Program-made: the position numbers and the translations under genes | Notes under the pieces: generated by a model | The model's input: the letters and a program-made list of their open reading frames with translations, nothing else | What the model was told of the DNA's origin: nothing | Databases searched by the model: none | Shown: in pieces, positions 20,189-39,148 of the stretch | Layout: each line of letters starts with the position of its first letter | How positions within the stretch are numbered: position 1 is the first letter of the stretch | Source: Styela clava | Taxonomy: Eukaryota | Length of the DNA stretch: 64,000 nucleotides | Direction of reading: 5' to 3' | NCBI RefSeq assembly: GCF_964204865.1 | Contig: NC_135264.1 | Coordinates: forward strand, 2,046,001 to 2,110,000

Positions 20189-22108
20189 CAGTGATTCCCA
20201 AAGTGGGCGATATCTCCCCCCGGTAGGCGAAAACGACACAGAGGGGGGGCGAAAAAGTCGAATGGGGGCGATTTCGCGAAACGTGTATTTGTTCAGCACA
20301 TCGTGCACTTGATTACTGTACTCTGCGTCCTTCATAGGTTTGATTCACGTAGACGATTATCACACGCGAAAGGATTGCTGGACTGGTATCCGCAGTAAGG
20401 TACGGTAGTTTGCGAAACCCAGTGGTCGGCAAAATACGGCCGAAGTAAAATAATCTGGCCCGGGACGCTTCACTGAATGGGCTTTTCCGCGACCTTTGAC
20501 CCTGGGAAATTTTCTCTATACTTTCCAATTTTCAAAGTTTCGGTGCTTATTTTAAGATTGGTTTCGCGAGTTGTCGCCTGTAACATGAGGTTTTTGTTTC
20601 AAACTATCATTCTAATTCATACCATTCAACAATCTGTTTTTTAAAGTACCGGTAAAGAATTTTAGTCTAGTCTATCACAGCTATTTCTACACTAATTTTT
20701 GATTACTGGAATTAAACTGAAACTCCTAGGAAAACAGAGTGATCATTGAATTACCTGCTTTATATTTAAATTTCCGAAACACAACACAACACAACGCGAA
20801 AATGAGGTGTATTGTGTGCGACTACGCCTGAAAATCTGTCTGAGTGAGAAAAGTGTCTGAGCGGATGCGAAAGGGGGCATTGTTACCGTAAGTTTAATTC
20901 TGCATCTTGCTGATTGGCCAATGTCACGAAGTAAACATGGAAGTCTATGCCCGGGGAAACATCCATTATACAGACAAAACTCCGGTTTTGACGATGAATT
21001 AATTTTTATTTATAATCTACGCTCGAAGAGTGAATCAGTGAATTTTTGTAAGAATGTATCTCCTTAAAGAAAATCTCTAGCAAAATTTCACAAACCATGC
21101 GAAAATATTCACTTCGATGTCCGGAGGTACATATTTGTGCAAACAATTATTTTGGAAATTATTACATTACAGAGAACAAGCAAAGAACTAGGATTAGTGA
21201 TGCCCATTTAGAAAATGTTCCAATCTTAGCGTCGTAAAGCTATCAAGCGTGATGCAGCAACAAGACAGTGTCACACTAAATGTCATTGTAATTATTTTTT
21301 AATAAGACGACTGAGTTGAGTTCATGAGCTGTCGTGTCGCAGTTTTCGCGCGCTGTTCCATTTTCAACTTTCAAAAAATATATGCGACCCGCAAAAGACT
21401 AGCAACCCTTAATTTTGCACCGTGATCGACATAAAATTCGCCGACCCCTGGGCCGTAGTCGATAGTCGGTCACGACTTTTTTCACATCCGAGTCCATGAA
21501 TCTAAAACAAATGACTGATTTATTCTACGGAATGGTGATCGGACTGTGGAGGCCTCGGATGAAGAATTGAGGATGAATTTTACCGAAGATCGTTATATAT
21601 CATGTATTTCGGTGCAGATCATCAGGCTGTAGGGATGAATGAGATGTACGAAAATTATTATTATAATTTTGGGAAAATTACCTTTGTTTTATTATTTTAA
21701 TTTGCAATGGGGTGAATATTTAGGGAGTTAAGTGCTTTAGTTTAGGCCAAGTACACGGAGGTTTTTGAGAAGAACCCTGGATTCTTTCATTTCCGAACTC
21801 TTATATGATGAAAAAAGGGTTTTCAGCCGTGCTACTATTGCTATCAAAACAACGTAATCGCCTTTCCATCAGTAAATGGGTCGATTTTAGATTGTGTCTG
21901 ACGAGAATGTCTCCAAATAATGAAAAACTCGATAAAAAGCACCAAGCTCATCCATCTCATTAAAACACACCATAAACTATGATTTGTCGTCCTATTTGGT
22001 CTGTAATATATTCGTTTCTAACTTTACATTTTTTTGTAGTGCCGGGGGCGATGAAGTTGTATAAACTACTACAGGGGGGCGATGGTGCAAAAAGTTTGGG
22101 AACGACTG
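20189..22108 (+). mobile_element. Degenerate hAT (Charlie/Buster-type) element, about 1.9 kb, with a nested MITE fragment
   Basis: TIR cagtgattcccaaa / tttgggaacgactg; gggggcga subterminal motifs at both ends; flanks acctagtc / actagtc; no intact ORF. Confidence 0.65.
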
Positions 22109-22115
22109 ACTAGTC

Positions 22116-22601
22116 CATAGGTTCTCAAAGTGCTCAGTACGGAGCCCCAGGGCTTTGCAAAAAAAACAGGGGCTCCGCGAGCTATTCGATTACTTTTTAA
22201 AATAGGCCTACTGACTAATTTTGTAACTGTTCAAAGAAGCAATAACAGCTTTGATAAAATCTAACAACAATATAGCCTCGACATATGGCAAAGAGGCGGA
22301 ATTGAAAATGACATTATCTATAAGCAGGAGCGCAGCCAGGATTTTTAAGAGGGAGGTGGTTCAAAATTGGAATCAGAAATTTCCGCGCCCATCATTCGGG
22401 ATTAGAAAAAAGGGATAACGAGATATCTGTTGCGTAAAATATTCAATCCGTGAGCGGTTCAGCATTTAAATTGAGTAAAGTACTTTTAACTTGCTCAGGA
22501 ATATTAATCTGAAAGTAACAATTTTAACATTTATTTTGGGGCTCCGTGAATAATAGTCAACATTTTCAAGGGTTCCGCAACACCAAAACTTTGAGAACCG
22601 G
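22116..22601. mobile_element. hAT-type MITE directly abutting the previous element
   Basis: Termini ggttctcaaagt / actttgagaacc; internal ggggctccg motifs. Confidence 0.6.
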
Positions 22602-23797
22602 GATAAATATGTAAATCCTATCCTAACCCCTGGCCTAGTCTGCAACCGAATAGAATGCCTTGTCGCCGATGTGAAATAGCGTACTTTCCACTGGATAGCG
22701 CTGTGGAGCAATTATGCATAACAACAAAAAATTGATGACAGAACGAAGAACGCTAAACTCTAATACACACGGCTGGCATAATTATTTACACATTTAGACC
22801 TATTAAAGGTCCCCCATTCGTATATTTTGAATTATTGAGTAAAATTTAAAATATAACAATAAAGTTGTCGCTGCCATAATATTTACAAATACGATCAATT
22901 TATGGTTAAAGTCAATGTGAAAGGTACGAAGGACTCAATAATACAATCAAACGAACATTCGAAATAAAATTATTTACAAAAAAAGAACTCTGGTTAATAA
23001 AAGGATTCGCAGGCTTTTCCATTGGATTGAATAGTACACATTCTTGTTTCCCATGGGACACGTGGGGTAATTAGGACAAGCGGGACACGTAAGACAATTG
23101 GGACAATTTGATATAAGATTTCGTTTTGTGAGTTAACAAAATTAACATTATGACCGTACTGGCGCGGATTTAGCATGATAATGAGGTGACGAGGTAGCAC
23201 GATCGTACATACACACAGTCAAAGTTAGAAAGTGTTGGGCGTATAGCGCAAAACAAAGCTCTACGAGCTGGGAATCCCGACCCCCCCCCCGATGAGCCGC
23301 GAAAGGGCTCAAGAAGATCGCGTTAAAATCTTTTTAGGCCTTAATCTATGTTAAAACAAAATATCGATCAAATTTGGAACCAGCATTCAGACCCACCATC
23401 ACTGAGTGTCCCAAGTTGTCTGGCCAAGTTCTTGTCTACTGAGTTCCTATTTAGTCAAAATTTCGTAGCGGAATTCGAAGTTGCCGTAGACATTCCGTTA
23501 TCTATAAAGAATGTTACCAAAAAGGAAACGAAACCTTTTCACGCTGAAAAAAAAGAGTAAATCTTCGAATGTGAAAACACGCACCAGCCGCGTGATAACT
23601 ACTTTTTGATGTTATTGTCGCTGTATCGATTATTTTTTTGTTAATACCGGCAATGTTTTATCGTCAATCCATTGTCAGTATGATAAACGATAAAAATGAT
23701 CACATAATAATTTAACTTCGTTTTACTTCTTACTTTAAGCAACTTTAAACAATTCCACTGATTTATAATGGCTTGCTGGGATTCACGTACCATTTAT

Positions 23798-24027
23798 GGT
23801 ACTCCCGAAGTATGTGAACCAAGATGGCGGATACCGGAACGTAGTATGTGTACCAGGTTAGGCCATAAATTTATTCCAATTATCTTTATTTTAGTTCTAT
23901 TACGAGTTCGGGGACTAGTCAAGTGACTCATGTAGTATTCGTAACTGAAATTATGGCCTACGCCTGACTTGGTACACATACTACGTTCCGGTGTCCGCCA
24001 TCTTTGTTCACATACTTCGGGAATACC
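23798..24027. mobile_element. Long-TIR MITE related to family A
   Basis: About 60-bp inverted arms with about 4 mismatches; the core shares sequence with family A. Confidence 0.8.
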
Positions 24028-24180
24028 CTATTTATTACACGCTATATCACGGCCAAATAAGAACGAACCAGGGTCCCATCATGATATGCATTGCCTGGTG
24101 TAGCAGATAAGTAGGTGGTTACTCATTTTGCATTATTGTCTCATGATACAAATATCACTTCCTATATAAGGAAAACCAGA

Positions 24181-24350
24181 GGTTCCCGTACAGTTGAACC
24201 TACGACAACTGCACCTGCATTCTATTACACATATTGGAATTTTTTGTTTTGCGGATATTTGAACCCATACTAACCCTAACCCATGGGTTTTAGCACCCGC
24301 ACATAGATTGAACCCTCGGATATACACATGGGTTCAAATGTACGGTCACC
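24181..24350. mobile_element. Short MITE
   Basis: TIR ggttcccgtacagttgaacc / ggttcaaatgtacggtcacc; central taaccctaaccc. Confidence 0.6.
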
Positions 24351-27300
24351 AAAACCAGACGTTTGGAGTGTGTGACTAACGAATAACCTGTGAGCTATTT
24401 ATTACACAAGATACATTTTAATAAAATTTAAACATTTCAGGGTAACATTTGTTCGTGGACGTTCGCTAACAGTTACTTCTTTCCCAGAGCGATTTCTGCC
24501 TCATCAAATAGGTTTCGTGCATTATACATTGTGACTCATCCATTATAAGTATTTAAATTTACATTTTATATTCGCACTCAGGCTTCGCCGGCGCCTAAGA
24601 ATTTGTTATTACTTGAAACGACCACAAGGCCGAACCCGCCCGCGGCCTGAGAAACACCGATAGATTCGTTGAGCAGAAAATTTTTAATCAGCCTTTGTGT
24701 GAAAAGCCAGACACTAAAAAGTTACGTTTCGCCAGATAAATCTATGTAGTGTCAGCAGCTTGCATATGCAGCGAATATTCACACCCCCATTCATTCATTC
24801 ACATTTATTGGTCCCTCCAACGAAATGCCCTTTGGCCGACACCGGGAAAAGTGTCGATACAAAACAACGCTCATCTTCGGCAATCTGTAAGCGAGAATTT
24901 TTTGATGCGTGACTGTCTTCGCCTCTAAAACGAACTTACGTCGAGGTCGTCGCATGCTCAGCGCGTGTTCTCTTCGTGGCCTACAGATCATAACACGTGA
25001 CGTCGGGGGTGTGTCTCTCATTCGCGACGGATGAATGGCGCAGGCGTACTCCTGAAAATGTTTCATAACGTTTCGTTGTTGAATTTGCTGGGATGTTTTT
25101 AGGTATTGTTTGTGTTAAAGATATTTCTTGCGGCTATATTTTACGTAACGCGTACCTAACCTACGTCTATAAATATATATTCGACTTATATAATTGTTTC
25201 CCGGAAATGTTTTCGACTTCTTTCTCATATCATTTCTCTAAATCAATGTCACATAAACGTTATCACCGAGTTGGGAAACTCACTCAAAATACAGAATTAT
25301 AACTCATTTCTTGCAGCTCACTTCATTTTTCCAGCGAACAAGGTAAATGTACTTTTAACCCAACTTTAAAATAACATTTCATTTGATCATAGCGACTGTA
25401 CAATGTGCATTGATGAAATGATTTCAAATTCGTATACCGTGTTCAATACAACACTCAAAAATTCGACAGGTGCAGCTCCGAAACCTTTGTTTCGTTCGTT
25501 ATACTTGTAAACAATGTCATGTTGAAAAGATTTTGGCCAAAATATGGAAAAATGTATTTTACCGATCAAACTTTAAAAATTCTGAAAGTAAACTGGTAAT
25601 CTTAATCTATACTGCAAATGAACGGCGAACGGTTTCCAGTCGAACGTTTGTCCTTATTTTAAATGGAGGAAAAGAAATAGATGATCCATGTTGCTATTTC
25701 AATAGTCACCTCCGCAGTACATATTACTGGGATGCCAAATGCAGTTGCGTACTGCCAATCAAGCCCGATGCTTTATTTTCTTCAAATACTACAGTTTAAA
25801 TAAAAATGTAATATGACTGTTTGCAATTTTGGTATGGTAATTAAAAAAAAATGTGAGTCGTAATTATAAAAATGCTTGTAGTGCCATCATTGAAGCTGAA
25901 ATCGCTGCAACTCGGCGTTCCACGTTCTGCCATAACGGATGAAATATGAAAAATGATTCCATTCCAACAAAATAAAAAATGGAGAATCTGCAGATGCAAT
26001 AAACTCGAGAGCTTGATTTTTGGGTTTTTCATCTACTGAATTTTGATACATTGCTCATAGAAAAATGCCGATGCATGCCTGGTTTTGACCTGTAAACAGA
26101 AATGAAATAGCACTAACACTCGACCCTTAGCATATCTTTATATATATTACGTGGCACATTCAGATTGGTTTATTCTGACAACTCCCGTTATTACATTTTG
26201 TATAATTGTGTCCCACGCGTGAGACACGCGTTGTGATGTCACAGGCCATAAGCCTACCTAATTTAGCCTTTTCGTGAAAAGTTTTTTCTTTTCAACTAGT
26301 ATCATGTACTTGTCTGCAAATGATAGCTTAAATAAAATTATTCACCGTGGGATGCCATGCAAATGATTGTCGCCTCACGTACATTTGTGAAACATTTATT
26401 TCTGTTTTCGTTCTAGGAATCAAATTCATATATCTTCTCTTCTTCATATGAACTGACGTTCATTGACTTTTGATTTAAACACTTTCCCCTTAGTTCCCTT
26501 TGCTTCTTAGATGAGAACAGCGTCTGTTATTGGCTCCCTTGTATGGTTGCCAGTTTCTACAAATCTCACTTCATGATTACTGTATTGTACATTGTGAAAA
26601 AATATCGAAGAAATTTTCTACGTGTTTTGGACGATTTAAAATAATCAATTCCTATAACAAGTCTGCCGCTGGAAATACAGAAACCCTGAGAGAAGTGATT
26701 TGGGTTCAATTCGAACAATTTCACGAGAGAAAGAAAAACATTACCAAATCTGTGATGTTCTTATTTCGAATAGCGTTTTTTTTTATTTGATTCTAGCAGA
26801 TCAGGCCCTGTGAAAATGTTACGGCTTGCTTCTGATACCAATACAATACCACAAGCCTTTAAATCATGGATGGTATAGGGTTCCCGAGTCTTTGGAATGT
26901 GCATAAAATGGTAGATTTAGTGACAAATTTCGTTTTCTTCAATTTAATTTTGAGGTTTATACCCAGAACTGTGCGTTATAAAATCGATGAAGAAAACACT
27001 GACTCCCTAATTTCTTTGTTGGAATTTTACAGAAACTCTTTCGCAAGGTCTGAATCAAAGATATTGTGAAGCTGTGTTCTTAATGAAATTTTGCAGTATT
27101 TGAATTTTCGGATTTCAGCATCAACATCATTTCATTCTATAGGAATAACAAATTCAATCACAATATTGACTTAAACGAATATACATAAATATTGAAAATG
27201 AAAATATTTTAGAAAAGAGGCATACAAATGTAATATCTGACATTTTTTGTCAACGACTCTGGGTGTGGTCGACCATGATTTCATCGTTTTCTGATGTGTA

Positions 27301-29409
27301 CGTATACGTGCGTTAAGTCTGGTTTTCATGATGAAAACCTTTTCATCAATTATTCAAACGCGATTACCTCATTTAAACCTAGTCTACAACGGCAGAAGGT
27401 ACAGTATTGCGAAATATTTAGTTTTAATTAAAATAGGCGTGTATATGGTTGACGTATGTTACATCTTAATATTTGAGAAACATGTTGCATGAATGCATTT
27501 TACTTGTTGTAATATTTATATCAACTTCAACATAAAGCTATTCCGGACATCATCACGAAATCCTTATTCTGATTCCCAGCTCTGGGAAATTTTTTGTTGA
27601 AGTTAACAAACCTGTATCAACTCTGTTAGCTGAGCTGCAGCCGCGGCAGCAATGAAACGGTGATTTAACCTGTTTATTTCCACACAGCGTTTGTCAACCC
27701 TGTGAGTCATTCTGCCTTCGCGTATGTTTGCGTCTTGTTTATCAAATTATGAACGAGTTCAAGCCATACGCTGGCGCCATTTTGAACTAGTCGACACTTA
27801 ATTCTTCGCGCGCTTCGTTTAATTGAACCGTTGAGACTGTTGTTTTCTGAGCGGCGTTTGTGATATCGGTTATTTTTGAAAGAATTTGAGAACAAATATT
27901 CGTTCATATCGTGAGTGAAATAAACTTGTTGCAGCAATTGACCGCCAACGTGGTATACAAGCATTCTTTATCAGAAGAAACGTATTGATTTGGTATACGT
28001 GACTACCATTCTCGTTCGTACATTCAATTTGCATGCCAGGCCAATCATAATGGCATTAAGTTTATGAATATATACATCTTTTAGTTATGGTTGTGGCCAT
28101 TGCACAAACTTCAATAAATTTTTTAAATCGATTGGGATATGTCATTTAATATCTATTTCGAAAGCCGCGTTATAAATGCATAGCAGTATAAGCGGCGTCT
28201 GTCGTTTGCGGAATAAGCAATTTGTTTCATTATAAATCAGCTTTCACATAAATACCACCAAACATGGTGAATAATAATATATTCATCTTTTTTATATTGC
28301 AATGTTCAACAAATTTTATATTCAGTCGAAGTTATTATTCCGCGTCTGTTTAACCTATATTCAACGCAAAATATGCGAAGGTGAAGCAATATATTTCTGC
28401 GTGGTATGGGAGTCGATGTATTCCAGATAAACAGCATCGCTACGCAAATGACCTAAAATTTGATGACTACATGTATTGTTCAGTAAATGTCGAACCGCAG
28501 CGACTATCGTCTGCAATCTTTATGCGGAAAGTAATTTCGTCAGAGGGTATTTCCTTGTTTTTAATGCTGCAATGGCAATTTTGAGTAGCGTTAGACAATT
28601 TTAAGAGTAGAATAAATACAAATCGAACAACTTTATTTTGCGAAATATCTGCAATATTTTCAAATTTTCCCAAAATTCAACAAAGTGATTTTTGGCGTTC
28701 ATTATAAAATGAAACCAAGTTGGATGAACCCATCCCGAATTCGACTATCATTACCTTGTGTTCGATTAGCTAACAGAAGTGTGGCTTCGTGCCTTCCCAT
28801 CAGCTAAAAGGTAACAACTAACTTTGTCATAATAGAACCTTAAATAATGCTTGATTTAAAGACATCTGGTGAGATTGCCCATGCTTGTCTAATTTACATT
28901 ATTATATTCAATAATAATAAAAAAGTTCCTTTTCTGAATACCAATGTTTTGACGAGTAGCGTCGTATCCCTCAACAACGCCTTCATGTGACGACCAATCA
29001 CAGAGCTCCCTTCTTACATCCCACAATTGGCTGTCTCAGATCGTCCCAATTGCTTAAACATGTGGACAAAGACAAAATAGCAAAACGGACTTTAGTTGTT
29101 TATATGTGCCCTCGAGTAATCCATGTTACTACACAATATCGAATGAGATGGATAATAAGCTTGGTCGGATGAAAGCTGTAAACTTCCAGCGGGCTATTGA
29201 GATGTTGGAATTGGGTGTTTTGATGATTACCCAAAATCGAGCTTATATTAAACATATTTCGATCATATGCTTATGTCGAGGATTCCCAAATTCAGGCTAA
29301 ATTGCAATAATAAACATTGCAATTATAATTTCTTCCAAATGAGTTGAAAATTTTAAACCAGCCCATTATCTCTCACTTTTTTTTTAATTTTCAGCAACAC
29401 GCCCTCAAA

Positions 29410-29800
29410 ATTAGTGGGCGGGTGTGTTTATAAATTTTAGCAGCAATCGGGAGTGTAGTATCAAAAATAGACTACTTCCTGATTATTCTTGCCTGAGGCA
29501 ATCAGATTAACTACACAACAGAAGACACGCGCTGAACACGAGGTAAATATAAACGATATAAAAGATGAAAAGATTGTTTTCAAGATATACATTTGGCCGC
29601 TTTTCCGGTAAAAAAAATTCAAAATAAAGAGCGGAATATAGCTTCAAAGTAGAGCCAATTTTTCTTTGTCGGCTTAACTTGAAAAATATTGCTTCGGTGA
29701 CGGAACGATATACCCGCTACTGTACGTACACACTCAGGCGTCCTTGTTTCTGATTGGTGGATTAAATCGCTAAGTTAGGGGTGGGCGCGTTATATAAAAT
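29410..29800 (+). promoter_or_regulatory. Candidate distal promoter(s) of KLF10/11
   Basis: GGGCGG 29416 plus TATAAA 29429; E-box pair 29526-29542 followed by GTAAAT; ATTGG 29753, GGGGTGGGCG 29778, TATATAAA 29791. Confidence 0.45.
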
Positions 29801-32800
29801 TTTATTTGGAATCATTCACGTAATAAATACCTCAAAACACAAAAAGTGTTGCCATGGGACCGCCTAGTACTTAAGTATTTGTGTTGTAATATAGATTTGA
29901 AATCAGAATTGAAATGCAGACAAATATCCCAATAAAATTGAGATTATGTCTGTTGCCTAACTTTAAATATTTAAATAACTAGCACTGAAAAAGTAATAAT
30001 ATGATATATTTACGAACATCGTTGCCATAGAACCAATCGAATCCTGAAGGCCACCTTATTGCTAAAAGATAAAAGATTTATGTAATTTTTTGTTCGGATA
30101 ACGACCAAATTTTTTAATTCCGAAATTAGTTTTTATTTACAATGATGCCAAAATATGTTCATTGCGCATAAAGTTTTCACAACTTTATTTGTGAAACAGA
30201 TCCAGAATCTATAAGAAAGAAAAACGCTATTGCAAAGGTATTTGCTGCCAAAAACATACAAAATGGTTACAATTTTCACAAAACCTTGTACTATTCTGCG
30301 TGACAATGGATATTGCTAATCTTGCGTACCATGTTTTTCCACATGGCAAATAAACACCTTTTTATTCGTAGGCGGCCTGCATTCACGATAGCGAAGACAC
30401 GCCTATTTCGCACGAAATGTCTTTATCACACTGATGCAAAAATTTTGTGATTCAGTAGAGCGTATAATGCAAGTTTGTGCTTCAGAATTCAACAGACCAT
30501 GGGGGAACAGGGCGTGACAAGCCAAGATTGTCGGAACCAATCACAATAATGGGAGTACTGCGGATTACTTTTGTGTAAATACCTAATTCGGTTTGCGCTT
30601 TTCTTGATTTCGAAGTAATCATACTAACACTTTCTTCACAATATCAAACAAAGTCAGCAGATTGTAGCAATTCGACCAAGACTGTTATTGCTATTATTTA
30701 TTTCAGTTGTTTCAAATATAATGCTTGCATCAAGTATGCAAACCGGTAATTTTACTTGTTTACGCTGGTAATCGTGAACTAGAGCTTATGACATATGAGG
30801 GCCATGAGAAGTAAATGTCAGATTCTTTCCGGTTTGTACACACGCAATTCCTTGTATGTATGACCTCAATCATATAATGCTTCCAATTATGGTTTTGTAT
30901 GTGGATCAAATATAGCAATATGAAGCAAACAACTTCCGTCTAACCGTGCCTTACTGGAAGTTGATCATAATCCCCCAAGCGCAGGAGGTGTATTCTGTTC
31001 GGCAATGAAAAGTAAAGTTATGAAATCACCAGCACAAACTCCTTCGGTCACTTACGCGTTTACTTCATTTCTCAATATCGAATACTCTCGAAATATTGAA
31101 AATTAAAACAAAGATACTGTACTGCGGTCTAGTTTGTTAACATCTACGACTTAGATTCTAAGTGTTTGAATATTTAACAAATATTAAGGTTTTGGAAGAA
31201 GTAATTATGAATTTGTCTTTACTTTGATGGAGAAAAGTGTCGACGTCAATACGATCCCAACAATATTGTTGGACTTTTTGTGATATACATAAATTTTTAT
31301 ACAACATAATGACACATCGTCATATATTACTCGGATATTCTGGGTATTTTGCCTTAATTTTACCCAACTGACATTGATCTTCCGAAACTGGCAACTAAAT
31401 TGCGATCACGCATATAAAGAAAGATACGACGCAGGAAATCACACTTTCATCAGGTACTCAGCGTGTGTTCTCGAACATCAGCAACGTGCCGACAGCCTCT
31501 ATGCCGCGTGGGCGATTCATGGGTGCATTGTCACGGGACAAAACCACGGGGTAAACAATGGGACACGTGGACGAATCGACACATTCTCAAAGATATGTGA
31601 TATTTGTTTTACTACTGATTAAATATGACTTGGTTGTCAAATTACACGCGTGAATAGAGTGTCATTGCACTAAAGCACGTTGCTCGTTACAATCGAGGCC
31701 ACCCAGCTCCCCACTCCCACTCGCCTTCCGCACGTATCAATCTTCATATTTATAAGATGGTTGCTCCCTAAACTTTGACCTCATCCCCCCTTCATAAAAA
31801 AGTCTTTCCATACCTCACCAATACGAGTTTTTTCACACTTCCGGCAACGTTTTAATTAGTAGGCTTGTGAAGACTCGTTAATAATCTCTCGAAAATGACC
31901 TTGTGGTTTCATATTTGAAAATGCAAAAACTAATTACCTCAACATATTCATTAATAACTTTAATAGTTATTGAAACATGACTAAGAACCTAGTTCGGATT
32001 CAAGAATTACAAAAAGTCGATGCATTACAATTTGTTTGAGTGGGTGGGTTTGATTTCAGTTGTTGTGTCATGGTCCATGTCTGACAATTCATTGTTTTAA
32101 GCTGTTTTTACCAATATAATAAGAAAAATAGTAAAGAAAAATGTCTGTAATCAACGTTTTAATTTAAATGGTGTCGCCACCCTTTGTTGGTTGCTAGGTA
32201 CCCTAGTTTGGTGTGCTCATGTCGAACTAATAAAAACTTAATAACAAACAACAGTTATAATGACTGTAAGAAAAATTGGTGCAATTTATCGACAGGATAA
32301 AAATAGTTTATTACCGACAGTAAGCCCTGCTGTAAAATTGCTTCAGTTTAAAATATTTTCGTGAGTCACTTCGCACAAACTTCTTTCGTAGTGGTGACTT
32401 GAAAATTCCACTAAATGTTGCTTTACATATAACGCTAGATCGTTAATTAGATTATGTGTTCTAGATTATATGAAAAATATTTTAGTTTCTATTGCTCTAA
32501 ATATTGCGAGAAATATACAAAAGTTCTTCGTTATAATAATTTCCTTTGTCTTCATAACCTGCAAGAGTTTTGCATATTTAACAAAAGCGACCCTTCACAA
32601 AGCAAGGATTATTGTTATTGAATCAGGTGTGACACATTCCAGTTGAATTGGCCAATCACTCGGGAAGAAAACGTGGTGTTTTTATTCTCCCATCACTTGC
32701 TGATCCGTTGTCCTTGTCCCAGTTGCGACTCGAATTATATAAGTTGCGATGAATTCCATTTTGGCCCTTTGTTGTTTACTTATATAACAGAATATCGGGT

Positions 32801-33899
32801 GGCAGAAGTTCTCGTGGTCTAAATCGGTAGGTTGTTGATTGAAAGTTGTGTTTCGTGTTTTCGTAATATTGAGATCATTTTTGTTTCACTATACTGTCAC
32901 CTGAAAGCTTTAAAGTTTGTCGAATATTATATACAAAACGTTCATATATATAGCACAAACTATTTCAACTTTCAGTAGCTCAAAAACAAAGAATTTTGAA
33001 ACCAAAAGCTAGGCCAAAAAAACAACAACATAATATTTCGCTCTTTCAACAGAAGTTTGAATAATCGTGCAATCTGGAATTTGTTTCAGAAGTTTACCAT
33101 GCAGCTCTTATTTTATAGTCAAGGTAAAACAGTCTTCTTTCACTTCTCGCATGAAGTTGAATAATGGCATTTGCTTATATAATTGAAATTTCATAAATGT
33201 GGAAAATAATAAACCTTGGCACCTCTTGCACATTTTTTGCGTATTCGCACGACTAAAAACCACTTTCTTAAATAGAATTTGTAAAGAAGGGCACCCACGC
33301 TATGTCATGCAAGAGTATATTTTGTTCAATTTTAAAATCCAGATATTGATTTGCTGGTGTATTTCTGAAAACGGCCTATCAAATGTGTTTAACGCACAAA
33401 AACCAGACACTGGAAATATTCAGTCGAGTGTATATCTATCTGTGACCATATAAGGTCAAATCCAACATTTGGAATGCCATTAACGACATCGAAGGGTTGT
33501 CGTATATCAATCGATGAATGGGGAATGAATGGCGTTTCATAAACGACGGGCAAAAAGATTTAATGGCATTCCAATAAAGAAACGCTGATATACCATGTGT
33601 TTAATCCCTGTATCAAGGATAAAATATATTTGTCTTAGAGGGTACAAAGTTCAGCTTTGTTCCTTGCCTGTCGAATAACATAAAAGCTTTGGTCACAAGG
33701 GAACTGATAACATACAGTACTGAAATAACGCAAATGCTTAGTTGCCGTGCGACTGTTTTCATCAGATTCAAGTTTAACATGAAATTTTATAAAGCGGAAT
33801 TAATTTGAAAAATTTAAAAAATGTGGTTTCTGGGGGTCATTTATATTGAATACCCGCTTGAATCTCACTAGCCTGTGGTGCAATATTAGTGGCCCTAAA

Positions 33900-34100
33900 G
33901 TTGTGGGCGTGGGCGAGGCAGTTACGTAACGGCCGCCCATGAGCACGTTTCTTTGTGATTCTGAAAGCTTCACGCTATCAAATCAGCTGTTTCACGTATC
34001 GTGCATGCAGTGATCACGCCGCGAGCGCGTGAACACGAGAGACGTTTCCCATCGACGTCGCGATTCAAGCGTTCTCATTGGTTGATTCGCCTCACCCGCC
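33900..34100 (+). promoter_or_regulatory. Proximal CpG-rich regulatory cluster of KLF10/11
   Basis: GGGCGTGGG 33905, palindromic GTTACGTAAC 33921-30, ChoRE-like pair 34015-31, GACGTC, ATTGG and CCCGCCC, all just upstream of the acceptor at 34190. Confidence 0.55.
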
Positions 34101-34293
34101 CATTATTTACGTTTGTTATTTATCATGCCTCGGTGCAATCCCCGACTGTACCTTTTTTTGTAACCTAACTGATCACAGAATTTGTCTCAGATGAATGTTA
34201 TTGTATAATTCGTTCGCACAAAGGCGGCAGCAGTTTTCATTGCTATCATTTTACGGTAGAAATTTTCGACTAAATACATTTAACTGGAAAGGA

Positions 34294-37200
34294 ATGCGAT
34301 CACATCCCTGTTCACCATCACGATCTCCTGACTTCGACGGATTCAACGTAAGTTTTTCAAATATTATAGGGTAGATTGAACTGTTTGAAAGTGGATTTTA
34401 TGTTTTTTCGCTTCGGTACGATGAAATGATTTCGTAAGCTGGTACCGGTAGCAATATTGAGTTTAATCAGATTAGTCACGCACCACTTATTGCTAATACC
34501 TGTAAGCGGAGGGTTCAAATATTACTGAAGTAGCCTTGACTTGTTGAGTCAAATTGTAATTTATATCTGTATGGCTTGAAGTTATGTATCAAAGTCTGCC
34601 TAGGCCACGGGCTTGTTAAAATAACAAAACAGTATGACATTTAAGCTAATTATTATCGAACACTTCATAAACTGATAATACAGCCATGAGAGGTTTTTAA
34701 TTGTGGTCATCTTTTATATGTAAAACATTGAAATTTGATAAATTTATTAGTTGTGACCCTGGTTGAAAATTTTTGGGTTTTTGAACGGAAACAAATGAAA
34801 GTAAAAAAATCGTAAATCGTCTTCCACGTCTTGAACCAATGAATATTTTCCATAGTTAATGGGTAAAATGATATCTTTTTAGGAACGTGTGGGCTTTTGT
34901 ATGTGTGTCTCAGTTGCATAAGAAAATAGTGCGCCTCTTATCGTCATTTCACACTTACGCTAGTTCTGCGCAATCTGTGCCCACTAAACGTTGCTACTAC
35001 GTCATCGGCTCAGACGGCGACGCCCACACCCGAGTTTCCCCATTGACAGACCTCGATCACGCGTTGCCGGCGTGATCGGCAAATGTGCGTCACGTGTCGC
35101 GAAAGACTTCTTAACTGTATGAATGCCACTATATAATATTATTATGTGTATTGGCTTCATATGACAGTATGATCGTGTAAATTATCGAATTGACTTTTAT
35201 TAAAACTTTATTTTTTTTTTTCAGGACTCAATATCACCAACTATACCATATTGCGATTCTCATAGAATGGTATTATTTTCAATGATGCCTGACGAACACA
35301 CACAACACGATCACGATCGTTCTCGACACGACAGCTCAGCGTGCAAAGGGTGTAGTGAATGTGATGCTGCTAAAGTACTAATTTCTATACGTAACTGCGA
35401 CTCAACAAGTACAATGACTTCAACTACCACATCGACTGTTGCTTCACCAGCGAAACTCGTGAGCCCACCTCAAAGAAAAACGCTATTACCTCCAAGGCTG
35501 CGATTTAGAAAGCAATATATCAACAATTATAGTTATCCAAGAAAGACTGATTCTTATTCGGCTCCACCAACGCCGTGTGAGAGTCCAAAGCCGGCGGACA
35601 GCCCCCCTACTACTTTAACCCCTCCATACACTCCCCCACCGAACAATCACAGCACAGACTCTCAATACGTTCCTGCTCAATTTACCAATTCTCAGCCTAC
35701 TGTGGCAATGTCAAATCAATCGTCGTCAACCGTAGTGACTGCCTCGCAGAATCATTTTCTACAAAGTGTCAGTAATAAGTTACTACGTCACAGCAACCAT
35801 CAGATGCTACACCATCCTATTTTATTGGAAAATCATGGACGCCGAAGACACGGTAGTGATGGTTATCTAATTCATCACACCGCTAAAAGAATGCGTATTA
35901 TGCTCGGGGAAGAAAGGCATCAAACCATGGTTGCACCTAGTGGAAAAGTAGTACCCGAACCTCGTACAGTGATTCAGTCGCCGCCAACATCGCAAGAACC
36001 TGGGTGTTCACAAAACGTTACGACGGCAGAATCATTTCCAAAACCTGTTTCCACTATGCACTTAGAGGCTCCAAACCTTTCCCCAAGCTGGTTTCTATCT
36101 TCCCTACCGCCAAGCAATTGCGCTTCTCCAACCGAATTGGAAAAGCACATGAATAATAACAATCCGGCGAATTTACGCACACCTTTATATTTGACTCCAA
36201 TTTCATCTCCGTTGAGCCACCATCATCACCAAAATGAGGAGGCACCTTCAGACCATCAGCAGCTATCATCTATTCAAGAGGAAGCTGATAGCACACGAAA
36301 AGAAGATCTTAGATCACCTCCCAAGATTGTGCAAGCAACTCCGGAGCAGGCTTTGAGAGTTGAAGCCACCAAAAGTCATGACCATCATAATAATTTGAAA
36401 GTTCATTGGAATGATAAGCCCGAAGAAATATTTCCGACCCAACAACATTCACCGCCACCTGTAGTAGCAAAAGAAACAACCCCGAGTTCAACGCAGTTTA
36501 ATGACGCTGCTTTCGTGATTCCTAAACCAATTCCAAGACCTCTCAGGGAAATTAAATCCAACGTAAACAAGCCAACTCCGGTACATTCCGTGTCGGTACC
36601 GACAATATCGAAAGAGCAAGAAATTAACGTTTCTTCTGTTAATCTTGTCAAAATGGAACAAGGAAAAGGCAAAGACACCCAACCTGGACAATTTTTACCT
36701 GTTGCCGGAACCAATATACAAGCAATGCCTATCATGATCATGGGGAACGTGCAAAACCTCACTCAAGCCGGAAGCGCGGTACTTTTGGTTGTGAACCCAC
36801 AACAACAGCAACAAATCTCCACTACTGTAGTATCTACAATATCACAAGCAATTTCACCGCCTCCAGTAAGTTCACCAAGGTCTCCGACTGCTATTGCACC
36901 AGCAACATCAAAACTTCAACCATTGGCGCCTAGTTGCGCGCCAATAATCATTGGATCGACCAATGGGTTAGCTTTCAACCAAAACAATCAACCAATACTC
37001 ATCGGGGCAGGTTCCCCGTCGAACAGTCGAGACGCAGATCCGAGGAGACGTAACCATCAGTGCCATTATCAGGGCTGTGGAAAGACCTACTTCAAAAGTA
37101 GTCACCTGAAAGCTCATCTCCGTACTCACACAGGCGAAAAACCTTTCAAATGTGTTTGGGAGGGATGCGATAAGTGTTTCGCAAGATCAGACGAACTTTC

Positions 37201-37573
37201 TAGGCACAAGCGCACTCACACTGGTGAAAAACGATTTGAGTGTCCGGTCTGTCAACGAAGATTCATGCGAAGTGACCATCTCACTAAGCATATGAGACGT
37301 CATACCGAAGGTCGTCGAATTCCTAACTGGCAAAAAGAAGTTGCCAAGTTGAATCCTAATTCACAGAAATCTCCACCAAGAAATCAACATGCTGCTTCAA
37401 TTGCCCCAGTTCTCTTACCCAATGGTCCCGTTCTTAAGACCGAAGTCACTATGCATTCTACTCCTTTGCAGTTGTCCCAACATGTGTTCGCGGCTGGTGT
37501 TGGGAGGCAGCAGATCAAAATTGCCCCAGCGCCCCCTAAAGAGCACTCATCACCCACTCTTACCCCGGCGTAA
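34294..37573 (+). CDS. KLF10/11: Krueppel-like factor 10/11 (TIEG/cabut orthologue), about 800 aa
   Basis: join(34294..34347,35225..37573), in frame via GTAAGT and TTTCAG; an alternative in-frame ATG lies at 34195. SID-like [11 protein letters not shown]; TPPYTPP; three C2H2 fingers [49 protein letters not shown]; [12 protein letters not shown] as in KLF10/11. Confidence 0.92.
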
Positions 37574-39148
37574 TTACTCAGAAATACTGAATACTTGTCT
37601 TCCACTGTACGCATATGTGCGTGGCACAACGTCATTTATAAGCTGAATTCAAATCTGAACCTTGTATAACGGTGGATGGAATATATATATATGTCTCATG
37701 TTACTGCTATTTTCTTTCAAATTGCCGACAGTGTTCCAATATGTCGAAATTTATCATTGAAATATACTGATCATCCGTGAGTGATATGTAACTCGTGTTT
37801 GATTTTATATAATTCAACGATAAGTTTGTTTCAAGTATTTTTCTGTTTTGTCGAAGCGACTTTTTTCGAATTATTTTGTTCCACTTTGTATTCTTAATAT
37901 ATATCATGAAAATGCAATATGGCAGCATAATTAGGTAAGGGTATGTGGTTGCAGAAAAGGTTGGCAAGATGCCGAGTTGAGTTTATACAGGATCTATATA
38001 AAAAAGGTTAAAAGACTATTTTTTTTGGGAATTCATGGTAGTCGACTCGTCATAGCACAAAGGAGGGACAGCGCTTTTTCGTGATAAGCTTGTTAAATTT
38101 GAGCAAGATCCCATCATTTGGTGTTGGCCTATGCATGAATTTCGTGTGCCGCGAAAAGATTGTGAGGTCGAGAAAAAAATTTTGCAAATTAATTTGATTA
38201 TTTCCTTCCTCGAATCTAAATGTGAAAATATTATTGATTCTCGAATATATTCCATATTGGGCCATGGGTCGAAAGAAACCATAATATTACACAAAAATAA
38301 CGCATCTCTAGGTCTCTAAGCACTTATTGTATCAAACACTCTCGAATTGTGCCCTGTAGGGCATGTCCCACTGAACCCCGGTCCATTGTTCCCCATAGGA
38401 AACAAATATTTTCAGACCATCCCACGGCGAATTTCGGAAGGCACATCCACTCGCCAACGTTATGGATATTTTAGAGTGGACTAAAGCTGAAAAATATCAG
38501 ACGGTGGTTTGTCATGTTGGAAAGGCTAAAGTCGAAAAAAGAAAAAACTGGAAATGTGAAATTTTAGTTTCAACCTCCCAAAACCAAATTCACTTCATAG
38601 CTTGTGCCGCTCTACCCGTCCGTTGTCCGTTCGCGGGGACGTTGTAACTCACCGAAGGGCGGACTGAAACTTCGAACCGCTGACAGGATTGCGGATATAG
38701 TATTAGTGTGAGAGCTGATTTTCCACTGTGTCCCATGTCCCAACGTGCCCCACCTTCCCCTACTACTAAAATATTACTTGTTTTCTTTTATTTTGATTGC
38801 TGCACTTCGTTTGGCGCAATAACTCAATCCCATGTTCATCATTCGAAAAACAGGACGTACTATTATGTGGAATCTATTGTGTATTTACCATATTATTTAT
38901 GTGATATACAAACAATCCAAAGGCAAATGAGTCTAAGGTGTTCAATGTACAACTTATTGCAAGAGTATTCAGGTGATGAAACTACGGAAAGGAGGGATTT
39001 CATTTCCAAGAGAAGTTTGCAAACAAAATATCACTAGAATCAATTTGTCATCTAGTATTGCGCCCCCACTAGGACTGCTCTGTGCTGTGACTGGGAACCA
39101 TACTGCTATGAAGTTTCCATCTTAGGTGGATCACGAAATCCCATAACG

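What the first reader, a model, noticed from the sequence alone, without database searches (positions are those of the whole stretch)
23578..35074. Six ChoRE-like E-box pairs (exact 5-bp spacer) around KLF10/11: candidate Mondo-Mlx sugar-sensing enhancer array
Seen: CACGCA-ccagc-CGCGTG (23578-94), CGCATG-ctcag-CGCGTG (24951-67), CACGCG-tgaga-CACGCG (26214-30), CACGCG-ctgaa-CACGAG (29526-42), CACGCC-gcgag-CGCGTG (34015-31) and CACGCG-ttgcc-GGCGTG (35058-74, in the intron). The last two are the same motif in opposite orientation, both GATC-flanked. Half-sites are shared while spacers and flanks differ, so these are not copies of a repeat. I noticed no such pairs elsewhere in the window, though that scan was by eye. 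Established: the ChoRE is two E-box-like hexamers 5 bp apart, bound by ChREBP/MondoA-Mlx, and mammalian KLF10 and fly cabut are targets of this pathway. Inference: a homotypic cluster conserving the sugar-to-KLF10/cabut circuit in this lineage, possibly with a CACGCG-biased half-site.
Basis: partly seen in the sequence, partly recalled or inferred. Interest (0 to 1): 0.8.

Follow-up and report, generated by a model that had tools for sequence, protein, structure and literature searches.

The report
Rare double E-box at sea-squirt KLF gene
Three of the six reported motif pairs are copies of a very rare palindromic double E-box at the start of a sea-squirt KLF gene, built like a sugar-response element and shared with an ATF4-like gene; the other three are weak.

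Summary
The window is Styela clava DNA. All six hexamer pairs are at the stated coordinates. None matches the published ChoRE consensus CAYGNGN5CNCRTG exactly: five have one mismatch and one has two. That consensus shows no spacer-5 peak across the window or genome-wide (408, 381 and 524 hits for spacers 4, 5 and 6).

Sites 1, 5 and 6 are all CACGC-N7-GCGTG. The window holds three at N7 against about 0.017 expected. The genome holds only 156, mostly copies of one transposon. The tighter form CACGCS-N5-SGCGTG occurs 12 times in 377 Mb. Two of these lie 1,043 bp apart, at the 5' end of exon 1 and in intron 1 of a KLF gene that is expressed and spliced. A third lies upstream of an ATF4-like gene and matches site 5 in 20 of 21 letters.

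Mammalian KLF10 and Atf4 promoters are bound by MondoA and MLX (PMC6363388, PMC8528285). S. clava has a conserved Mlx; I did not find Mondo. Sites 2-4 are weak.

My best reading is a Mondo-Mlx-type element (confidence about 0.5). Binding, sugar response and conservation are untested.

The parts
34015..34031 (.). Site 5, CACGCC-gcgag-CGCGTG. A strong double E-box at the 5' end of exon 1 (core promoter or transcript start). The extended form is GATCACGCCGCGAGCGCGTGA, from 34012.
   Evidence: Sequence. One of only 12 CACGCS-N5-SGCGTG hits in the genome. The longest transcript contig starts at 34014; the others start at 34148, 34213 and 34231. It matches the ATF4-like site in 20 of 21 letters.
35058..35074 (.). 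Site 6, CACGCG-ttgcc-GGCGTG. A strong double E-box in intron 1, flanked by GATC on both sides. It is the reverse-orientation twin of site 5.
   Evidence: intron 34348-35224. No differing letter is listed inside it in the three runs whose contigs cover it, although nearby intron positions vary.
23578..23594 (.). Site 1, CACGCA-ccagc-CGCGTG. The third CACGC-N7-GCGTG palindrome, about 10.4 kb upstream of exon 1. Its right half is a good ATCACGCG half-site; its left half is weaker (A at position 6 and an A flank).
   Evidence: It does not align to the transposon family that carries a similar palindrome. A hairpin element lies about 200 bp downstream, at 23794-24027.
24951..24978 (.). Site 2, CGCATG-ctcag-CGCGTG, overlapping a second weak pair CGCGTG-ttctc-TTCGTG (24962-24978). 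Weak.
   Evidence: Two mismatches to the ChoRE consensus and no statistical support of its own.
26214..26230 (.). Site 3, CACGCG-tgaga-CACGCG, a direct-repeat pair. Uncertain.
   Evidence: It is the only direct CACGC-N6-CACGC pair in the window. One mismatch to the consensus.
29526..29542 (.). Site 4, CACGCG-ctgaa-CACGAG, a direct-repeat pair. Uncertain.
   Evidence: One mismatch to the consensus.
33993..33998 (+). E-box-like CACGTA, starting 19 nt before the GATC of site 5.
   Evidence: The same 19-nt offset holds on the other strand between CACGTG (35091-35096) and site 6.
35091..35096 (.). Perfect E-box CACGTG in intron 1, 19 nt from the GATC of site 6 on the minus strand. TATATAA follows at 35130.
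   Evidence: one of 9 CACGTG in the window. Intron contigs have a depth of only 2-5, against 84-520 for the spliced transcript, so no intronic promoter is shown.
33905..34101 (+). Promoter-proximal block: GGGCGTGGGCG (33905), TTACGTAA (33922), GACGTC (34054), ATTGG, an inverted CCAAT (34077), and CACCCGCCC (34093).
   Evidence: What each motif binds is recalled, not tested. A ChoRE next to CCAAT is described for Txnip in a paper I saw only as a title in a reference list (Yu and Luo 2009, cited in PMC9777120).
34014..34347 (+). Exon 1 of the KLF gene. The 5' limit is uncertain, somewhere between 34014 and 34231.
   Evidence: Transcript contigs and the joint 34347>35225 in 4 of 4 runs. The RefSeq protein P0001 starts at the ATG at 34195.
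35225..37895 (+). Exon 2 of the KLF gene. The open frame 35267-37573 (768 aa) carries a DAAKVL motif at residue 33 and three C2H2 fingers near the C-terminus.

Best explanation
[quoted passage not shown] The extended form of the element is (G)ATCACGCS-N5-SGCGTGAT(C). The most likely factor is Mondo-Mlx, which would make this a tunicate carbohydrate response element.

The elements lie at the transcript start, in the first intron and 10.4 kb upstream of a KLF repressor gene that carries a Sin3-interaction-like motif. Under this reading, sugar-activated Mondo-Mlx switches the KLF gene on, as it does for KLF10 in mammals and cabut in flies. The same element upstream of an ATF4-like gene would place that gene in the same small regulon. 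Sites 2, 3 and 4 are at most weak accessory sites in a region generally enriched for the CACGC half-site.

Shown here: the sequences, their rarity and clustering, the shared flanks, the gene structure and expression, and the presence of Mlx. Inferred: which protein binds, and the sugar response.
For: - Architecture: two hexamers exactly 5 bp apart, with a conserved outer CACG and degenerate inner bases, as in the published consensus (PMC9777120). Each of the three sites has one mismatch to it.
- Rarity and clustering: the window has 3 CACGC-N7-GCGTG at N7 against about 0.017 expected per spacing. The genome has 156, so P(at least 3 in 11.5 kb) is about 2e-8 per window, or about 6e-4 over all such windows in the genome. 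Only 12 CACGCS-N5-SGCGTG exist in 377 Mb, and two are 1,043 bp apart at this gene (chance about 6e-5).
- Spacing: TCACG-Nx-CGTGA occurs in the window only at x = 9, and both occurrences are these two sites.
- Shared flanks among 22 half-sites (the 12 strict hits plus site 1, less two hairpin-associated hits): T at -1 in 16 of 22 and A at -2 in 14 of 22. Without the KLF sites, T at -1 is 11 of 16, P about 0.003. A review states that a 5' T flank disfavours Myc relative to Max, that USF prefers a GT flank, and that MLXIPL-MLX dimers bind tandem E-boxes as tetramers (PMC8431614, passages).
- A second gene: the ATF4-like gene (bZIP Pfam match; its only PDB match is ATF-4, E 6e-10; upstream ORFs in the leader) has GATCACGCC-C-CGAGCGCGTGA about 0.7 kb upstream of its ATG. 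That is 20 of 21 letters identical to site 5 with unrelated flanks. There it forms CACGAG-N5-CACGCC-N5-CGCGTG.
- Matching mammalian targets: MondoA ChIP found TXNIP, ARRDC4, KLF10 and TMEM97 promoters (PMC6363388). Arrdc4, Fasn and Atf4 are called MLX targets (PMC8528285).
- Mlx is present: 'max-like protein X [Styela clava]', 99% identical to the frame I cut out and 63-64% identical to human MLX over 99% of the query.
- The KLF gene is expressed: the spliced contig has a depth of 84-520 in 4 of 4 runs.
- The CACGC half-site is enriched in the region and two same-composition controls are not.
Against: - No site matches the vertebrate ChoRE consensus exactly (0 of 6).
- That consensus shows no genome-wide spacer-5 excess (408, 381 and 524 for spacers 4, 5 and 6). 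By eye, on the rows listed for contig 1, the distinct sequences are about equal across the three spacers.
- The motif CACGC-N7-GCGTG was defined after seeing the sites.
- Once the transposon copies are discounted, N7 is only about 1.5 times N6 or N8 genome-wide (estimated by eye from the first 50 listed sites of each).
- Mondo was not found. 51 HLH matches were reported; I read 30 as loci plus 3 more places covering five further matches, and 16 weaker matches could not be fetched. The Mlx protein as query hit only itself and a Hes-like exon.
- None of the 16 Arrestin_N matches lies near a strict hit; the nearest is 237 kb away. The arrestin promoters themselves could not be read.
- Of the other 9 strict hits, 1 is a transposon copy, 2 sit in hairpin elements, and the rest have no recognisable Mondo-type neighbour (a collectin-like gene, GH9 genes, transposon ORFs).
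- If the transcript really starts at 34015, site 5 lies at +1 to +17, which is unusual for an activator site.
- The ATCAC flank also fits SREBP (PMC8431614).
- No cross-species data.
Confidence: 0.5

Rival explanations
1. The three strong sites are real binding sites, but for another bHLH-zipper factor of the CACGTG class rather than Mondo-Mlx. Candidates are Mnt-Mlx or Max-network dimers, USF, TFE/MITF, SREBP, or a CLOCK-BMAL-like pair.
For: - MAX and MNT co-occupy MLX targets, including Atf4 (PMC8528285). Myc-Max can engage some ChoREs (PMC9777120).
- The genome encodes Max-, Myc-, SREBP- and ARNT/BMAL-like HLH exons (the names are my reading of the sequences).
- ATCAC is the SREBP half-site (PMC8431614).
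- klf-10 is also under circadian control (PMC3616910, discussion). A perfect CACGTG and a TTACGTAA lie nearby.
Against: - The strict 5-bp spacing with optimal outer halves and degenerate inner halves is the ChoRE arrangement. TCACG-N9-CGTGA occurs at no other spacing in the window.
- The T at -1 disfavours Myc, and A rather than G at -2 does not fit the GT flank of USF (PMC8431614).
- The SRE form ATCACnCCAC is not matched at its 3' end, compared by eye.
- The 6-7 bp spacing of tandem CLOCK-BMAL1 E-boxes is recalled, not checked.
Confidence: 0.25
2. The GCGTG cores are sites for a bHLH-PAS heterodimer (AhR-ARNT type, xenobiotic response element core) or for Hes/Hey repressors (class C site CACGCG, N-box CACNAG).
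For: - GCGTG is the core formed from the ARNT CAC half-site plus the AHR (T/G)NGC half-site (PMC8431614).
- ARNT-like and Hes-like HLH exons exist in the genome.
- CACGCG and CACGAG are the Hes-type sites (recalled).
Against: - These factors bind single asymmetric or single palindromic sites. A fixed inverted pair at N7 with ATCAC flanks is not their known arrangement (recalled).
- The -2 position of the extended AhR site falls inside the variable spacer.
Confidence: 0.1
3. The palindromes are remnants or relatives of a mobile element, not host regulatory sites. One transposon family carries GATCACGC-TTCTAAC-GCGTGATC in many copies.
For: - About 30 of the first 50 listed N7 hits are this family or near variants (counted by eye).
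- Five of the ten family loci compared are 98-100% identical to the reference locus over 257 bp around the motif; the other four are 54-67% in the ungapped comparison, yet show the same flanks in the printed 60-letter segments.
- L021, one of the 12 strict hits, is a 90% copy over 816 bp and lies beside hAT transposase ORFs.
- The family has the same GATC...GATC flanks as site 6.
Against: - BLAST of +/-400 bp around all six KLF sites and the ATF4-like site against six family loci found no alignment covering any motif. The only KLF_s1 hit is the separate hairpin element downstream.
- The similarity between site 5 and the ATF4-like site stops at the 21-mer.
Confidence: 0.08
4. Chance in a CpG-rich, CACG-rich stretch: none of the six pairs has a function.
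For: - No window-wide or genome-wide spacer-5 peak for the a-priori consensus.
- The region and the refined motif were both chosen after the fact.
- CpG observed/expected is about 1.1-1.2 in this stretch.
Against: - Three CACGC-N7-GCGTG where about 0.017 are expected.
- 2 of the 12 genome-wide strict hits lie 1 kb apart.
- 20 of 21 letters are shared with the ATF4-like site.
- The flanks are non-random.
- Two control pentamer pairs of the same composition are not enriched.
Confidence: 0.07

Closest known systems
Carbohydrate response elements (ChoRE) of mammalian TXNIP, ARRDC4 and KLF10 promoters, bound by MondoA/ChREBP-Mlx
   Same: Two E-box-like hexamers exactly 5 bp apart, with the outer CACG conserved (PMC9777120). 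Promoter-proximal position. The target is a KLF gene with a Sin3-interaction-like motif; KLF10 is among four MondoA-bound promoters validated by ChIP-PCR (PMC6363388). An inverted CCAAT lies 46 bp downstream of site 5, recalling the ChoRE-CCAAT arrangement of Txnip, which I know only from a title in a reference list.
   Different: The half-sites are CACGCG/CACGCC rather than the consensus form, so each site has one mismatch. The ATCAC...GTGAT flanks are strongly preferred. There are copies at the transcript start and in intron 1. Neither binding nor sugar response is shown.
Drosophila Mondo-Mlx to cabut circuit
   Same: A sugar-sensing bHLH-zipper pair driving a KLF repressor with a Sin3-interaction motif as secondary effector. 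cabut is among the genes most strongly regulated by Mlx (PMC3616910). The Cabut motif AAEVAL and the TIEG consensus EAVEAL (PMC3281117) resemble DAAKVL at residue 33 here.
   Different: Only DNA motifs are known for the tunicate gene. In the passages I read, the fly paper gives no cabut element sequence to compare.
MLX-bound Atf4 promoter in mouse cells
   Same: An ATF4-like gene in S. clava carries the same 21-mer upstream. Mouse Atf4 is listed with Arrdc4 and Fasn as an MLX target co-occupied by MNT and MAX (PMC8528285).
   Different: In mouse, loss of MLX or MNT raises ATF4 protein, so the sign of regulation may be repressive. The mouse binding sequence was not seen.
Single E-box sites of Myc-Max, USF, TFE/MITF and SREBP
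   Same: CACG core; the T-flanked or ATCAC half-sites of SREBP and TFE-type factors (PMC8431614).
   Different: Those are single hexamers or asymmetric 10-mers. Here two hexamers are held at a fixed 5-bp distance, and the inner halves are poor E-box halves.
Xenobiotic response element core GCGTG (AhR-ARNT)
   Same: The pentamer GCGTG is present in every strong half-site.
   Different: An inverted pair at fixed spacing with a palindromic flank preference. The extended AhR positions are not conserved.

Membership tests
ChoRE (carbohydrate response element) | Two E-box-like hexamers separated by exactly 5 bp | tested here: met
   All six sites have this layout.
ChoRE (carbohydrate response element) | Match to the published consensus CAYGNGN5CNCRTG (PMC9777120) | tested here: not met
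   0 of 6 match exactly. Sites 1, 3, 4, 5 and 6 have one mismatch and site 2 has two.
ChoRE (carbohydrate response element) | The 5-bp spacing is preferred over other spacings | tested here: inconclusive
   Met locally: CACGC-Nx-GCGTG gives 3 at N7 and none at any other spacing from 0 to 30 except one at N15; TCACG-Nx-CGTGA occurs only at N9; spacer 5 is the top spacer in 23-36 kb. Not met genome-wide for the generic consensus: 408, 381 and 524. For CACGC-Nx-GCGTG the genome-wide counts are 53, 156 and 61, but most of the N7 excess is one transposon family.
ChoRE (carbohydrate response element) | Bound by a Mondo/ChREBP-Mlx heterotetramer | not testable with these tools
   Needs EMSA, DAP-seq or ChIP.
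ChoRE (carbohydrate response element) | Confers a glucose or sugar response on the gene | not testable with these tools
   The runs laid are assembled contigs without conditions.
ChoRE (carbohydrate response element) | The organism encodes both partners, Mlx and Mondo | tested here: inconclusive
   Mlx: met. Papers mention Mondo sequences from the tunicates Ciona and Molgula and say the Ciona bHLHZ is divergent (PMC3323566, passages).
ChoRE (carbohydrate response element) | Present at other canonical targets (TXNIP/ARRDC-type arrestin genes) | tested here: inconclusive
   No strict hit lies near any of the 16 Arrestin_N matches; the closest is 237 kb away. The arrestin promoters could not be fetched, so looser motifs were not examined.
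KLF10/11 (TIEG) class | Three C-terminal C2H2 fingers of the KLF/SP type | tested here: met
   Pfam zf-C2H2 matched in 3 stretches, plus zf-H2C2_2.
KLF10/11 (TIEG) class | N-terminal Sin3-interaction motif (consensus EAVEAL; AAEVAL in Cabut; PMC3281117) | tested here: inconclusive
   DAAKVL at residue 33 of the open frame is kept as DAANVL or DAANAL in the three orthologues of 53-58% identity. This is a match by eye only, and KLF9/13 share the motif (PMC4558859).
KLF10/11 (TIEG) class | R2 and R3 repression domains, or orthology by phylogeny | not tested
   PMC4558859 finds R2 and the KLF10/11 architecture class only in vertebrates. RefSeq calls the protein 'uncharacterized'. A finger-region search returned only poly-zinc-finger proteins. 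The recalled '[11 protein letters not shown]' signature of KLF10/11 is present, but that is memory, not a test.
Homotypic binding-site cluster (enhancer array) | Local excess of the same half-site over a composition-matched expectation | tested here: met
   CACGC/GCGTG: 31 in 23-36 kb against 14.7 +/- 3.8 in shuffles. Controls GCACG/CGTGC and CGCAC/GTGCG: 15 against 14.5 and 14.7.
Homotypic binding-site cluster (enhancer array) | Sites conserved in related species | not testable with these tools

The most novel reading that the evidence does not exclude
Styela clava uses a high-stringency variant of the carbohydrate response element, ATCACGCS-N5-SGCGTGAT. It marks a very small Mondo-Mlx regulon of master regulators: a KLF10/11-like repressor, hit three times, and ATF4. 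That would make both the sugar-to-KLF10 link and the Mlx-to-ATF4 link ancestral to chordates. A hAT-associated transposon family carrying the same palindrome in roughly ninety or more copies has scattered further sites for the same factor across the genome.
Probability: 0.25. Interest if true: 0.65.

Novelty: new member of a known kind. Interest (0 to 1): 0.45.

Why it matters
The sugar-sensing pair Mondo-Mlx drives a KLF repressor in both flies (cabut) and mammals (KLF10). Finding the matching DNA element at the KLF gene of a tunicate, the closest invertebrate relatives of vertebrates, would show that the circuit is old and continuous in chordates.

It would also give a compact, testable element: a 21-mer found at only a dozen places in the genome, two of them at this gene. 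Spacer and half-site rules can be tested on it in an animal group where reporter assays by electroporation are routine (in Ciona, from general knowledge).

The shared element at an ATF4-like gene suggests a link between sugar sensing and the integrated stress response that could be checked in the same experiments.

If the binding factor turns out not to be Mondo-Mlx, the element is still a well-defined and unusually specific regulatory motif awaiting its factor.

Tried and rejected
1. Genome-wide spacer test with the generic consensus. It gave no spacer-5 peak, but the counts are dominated by repeat families visible in the listings. It has little power to show a few functional sites. I did not run spacers 3 and 7.

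2. Repeat status of the upstream region. Both searches spent nearly all their scoring slots on a high-copy element (window 20165-22600) and a 175-bp SINE-like element (24181-24355). They say nothing about low-copy repeats at sites 2-4. A local BLAST against the one transposon family found later was negative for all six sites.

3. Orthologous loci.

4. Mondo. The HLH Pfam scan and the Mlx protein as query did not reveal it. Three split-HLH candidates that I fetched were a neurogenin/atonal-like exon and two Hes-like exons.

5. KLF subfamily. A PDB sequence search and a finger-region search of the protein database were swamped by poly-zinc-finger proteins. One search was a wasted costly search.

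6. Neighbours of the other strict hits. Pfam on 10 long open frames and a by-eye screen of open frames of 55 aa or more in six of the ten loci gave, besides the ATF4-like gene, only transposon proteins, an armadillo-repeat exon, a collectin-like gene and GH9 genes. No recognisable metabolic Mondo target appeared.

7. Intronic alternative promoter at CACGTG/TATATAA (35091/35130): considered and not supported. Intron contigs have a depth of 2-5 against 84-520 for the spliced form.

8. Trans-spliced leader at the 5' end of one contig (18 loose letters before 34148): no AG acceptor precedes that position. Left unexplained.

9. Supplements and figures were not available. Figure 1 of PMC3177325 (presence or absence of Mondo per species) and the supplementary trees of PMC4558859 (Ciona KLF classes) could bear on the Mondo and KLF10/11 points.

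Full report
**What the window is.** The 768-aa open frame at 35267-37573 is 100% identical to the RefSeq protein 'uncharacterized protein LOC120334090 [Styela clava]'. An earlier scan note had already named the species. The window is contig 19, 2,046,001-2,110,000, of a 376.8-Mb assembly. It is 36% G+C with no CpG depletion (observed/expected 0.99).

**The gene.**
- Pfam finds three C2H2 fingers near the C-terminus.
- Contigs from four public runs were laid on 33000-38900. All four join 34347 to 35225 across a GT..AG intron of 877 bp, so they are transcripts. Depth is 84-520 for the spliced contig and 2-5 in the intron.
- Transcript contigs begin at 34014, 34148, 34213 and 34231 and end at about 37811-37895. 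The contig that begins at 34014 is preceded by 20 loose letters that I recognise from memory as a sequencing adapter. Some cDNA fragment therefore ended right at site 5. Contigs cannot fix the true start.
- Near the N-terminus the protein has DAAKVL, kept as DAANVL or DAANAL in three orthologues of 53-58% identity. This resembles the Sin3-interaction motif EAVEAL of TIEG/KLF10-11 and AAEVAL of Cabut (PMC3281117, passages).
- That motif is shared with KLF9/13. One survey finds the full KLF10/11 architecture only in vertebrates (PMC4558859, passages). I could not settle the subfamily. 'KLF with a Sin3-interaction-like motif, KLF10/11-like' is as far as the evidence goes.

**The observation.** All six pairs are present as written. 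With any CACGNN hexamer there are 8 at spacer 5. The two extra pairs inside the region lie at 24962, overlapping site 2, and at 35327, in exon 2; one more lies outside the region at 43587.

**Tests with definitions fixed beforehand.** The published consensus is CAYGNGN5CNCRTG (PMC9777120).
- None of the six matches it. Five have one mismatch and site 2 has two.
- Over the whole window, hits with at most one mismatch number 7 at spacer 5, the same as at spacers 0 and 7.
- Genome-wide, exact hits number 408, 381 and 524 for spacers 4, 5 and 6. Many are repeat copies.
- Within 23-36 kb, spacer 5 is the top spacer under every definition and exceeds block-wise dinucleotide shuffles. The region was delimited by the hits. 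After removing hits that overlap the six sites, the excess is marginal (16 against 9.75, P about 0.04).

**What is really there.**
- Sites 1, 5 and 6 are all CACGC-N7-GCGTG. The window has three at N7, none at any other spacing from 0 to 30 except one at N15, and about 0.017 expected per spacing.
- The genome has 53, 156 and 61 at N6, N7 and N8. About 30 of the first 50 listed N7 hits belong to one transposon family carrying GATCACGC-TTCTAAC-GCGTGATC (counted by eye). Unique N7 hits therefore number roughly 60.
- Three within 11.5 kb has a Poisson probability of about 2e-8 per window, or 6e-4 over all such windows in the genome.
- The tighter CACGCS-N5-SGCGTG occurs only 12 times in the genome. 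Sites 5 and 6 are two of them, 1,043 bp apart (chance about 6e-5).
- Sites 5 and 6 are mirror twins. In opposite orientations both read E-box (CACGTA or CACGTG), 13 nt, GATCACGCCG, 4 nt, CGCGTGA.
- In the window, TCACG-Nx-CGTGA occurs only at x = 9, and only at these two sites.

**A second gene with the same element.** I fetched 10 kb around each of the other ten strict hits.
- One, on contig 17, lies about 0.7 kb upstream of the ATG of a bZIP gene. That gene's only PDB match is ATF-4 (E 6e-10), and its leader carries short upstream ORFs.
- Its element, GATCACGCC-C-CGAGCGCGTGA, matches site 5 in 20 of 21 letters while the flanks are unrelated. A third hexamer makes it CACGAG-N5-CACGCC-N5-CGCGTG.
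- Across 22 half-sites, T precedes CACGC in 16 and A precedes that in 14. These come from the 12 strict hits plus site 1, leaving out two hairpin-associated hits. Without the KLF sites, T is 11 of 16. One of the hits counted there, L021, later proved to be a transposon copy. By my hand count, leaving it out as well gives 9 of 14.
- The other hits sit in that transposon copy, in two hairpin elements, or beside a collectin-like gene, GH9 genes or transposon ORFs. No metabolic gene was recognised.

**Which factor.**
- A fixed 5-bp gap between two hexamers, with good outer halves and poor inner halves, is the ChoRE arrangement. MLXIPL-MLX is cited as a tetramer on tandem E-boxes (PMC8431614).
- The T flank disfavours Myc, and the A at -2 does not fit the GT flank of USF (same review).
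- MondoA ChIP in human cells singled out the TXNIP, ARRDC4, KLF10 and TMEM97 promoters (PMC6363388). Mouse Atf4 is named as an MLX target together with Arrdc4 and Fasn (PMC8528285). The two S. clava genes that share the element are thus counterparts of two documented Mlx-network targets.
- S. clava has a well-conserved Mlx. The exon I found is 99% identical to 'max-like protein X [Styela clava]' and 63-64% identical to human MLX.
- Mondo was not found by the two scans I could run. Papers mention Mondo from Ciona and Molgula and note that the Ciona bHLHZ is divergent (PMC3323566).
- My recollection that in-vitro MLX and MLXIPL motifs read ATCACGTGAT would fit the flanks. It was not checked in any call.

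**Sites 2-4 and the 'array'.** These three match only loose definitions. The region does carry twice the expected number of CACGC/GCGTG pentamers while two same-composition control pairs are flat. A diffuse homotypic cluster is therefore plausible, but the individual weak pairs are not established.

**What argues against the Mondo-Mlx reading.**
- The refined motif was defined after the fact.
- There is no exact consensus match and no genome-wide spacer peak.
- No strict hit lies at an arrestin-domain locus, and those promoters could not be read.
- Mondo was not located.
- Site 5 may lie at +1 to +17 of the transcript.
- A transposon family carries a look-alike palindrome, although neither the KLF sites nor the ATF4-like site align to it.
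- There is no cross-species, binding or expression-response evidence.

**Verdict.** Three of the six sites form a statistically strong, very rare, ChoRE-like element at the KLF gene's 5' end, and it recurs at an ATF4-like gene. Mondo-Mlx is the best candidate (about 0.5), followed by other E-box factors (about 0.25). If true, this is a new member of a known kind of circuit, with a distinctive half-site variant. The joined exon 1 + exon 2 model was not searched; searches used exon 2 or the database protein.

Noticed in passing
L004-L007, L010-L015 and L021 (e.g. G000 contig 2, 23.9-26.2 Mb; contig 5 at 24,056,017): A transposon family of at least 2.8 kb carries the palindrome GATCACGC-TTCTAAC-GCGTGATC, with the same flanks as KLF site 6. 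It accounts for about 30 of the first 50 genome-wide CACGC-N7-GCGTG hits. One copy lies beside hAT transposase ORFs (DUF4371 and the hAT dimerisation domain). It may be spreading sites for the same factor.
   Followed up: partly
L025 (G000 contig 17, 7,475,638-7,485,637), minus strand: An ATF4-like bZIP gene with short upstream ORFs in its leader, the first only three codons long. The KLF-type 21-mer lies about 0.7 kb upstream of the main ATG, extended there to three hexamers each 5 bp apart.
   Followed up: partly
window 33905-34101: Just upstream of and within the KLF promoter lie GGGCGTGGGCG (a GC/EGR-like box), a perfect palindrome TTACGTAA (a PAR-bZIP/D-box-like site, from memory), GACGTC, an inverted CCAAT and CACCCGCCC. 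A KLF-type box in the gene's own promoter would allow autoregulation, as reported for Cabut (PMC3281117).
   Followed up: no
window 20165-22600; 24181-24355; 23794-24027: A high-copy repeat of about 2.4 kb (75-93% identical copies on many contigs), a SINE-like element of about 175 bp (89-93% identical copies) and a hairpin (MITE-like) element lie in the KLF upstream region.
   Followed up: partly
window 34195 vs 35267: The RefSeq model (833 aa) starts at an ATG in exon 1. Two of the three orthologues begin at the methionine that opens exon 2, so the 65-residue N-terminal extension may not be translated.
   Followed up: no
window 34148: One transcript contig carries 18 unmatched letters before 34148, with no AG acceptor in the genome there. 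This could be a mis-assembly, an upstream exon or something else; it is unexplained.
   Followed up: no
L029 (contig 13 at 20,662,024) and L030 (contig 6 at 11,363,225): Two ARNT/BMAL-like HLH exons with identical 52-residue translations lie on different contigs. This may be a recent duplicate or an uncollapsed haplotype.
   Followed up: no
L024 (G000 contig 16, 18,877,758-18,887,757): Tandem genes with glycoside hydrolase family 9-like exons (named from memory of the sequence). One strict double E-box, without the T/A flanks, lies between them.
   Followed up: no
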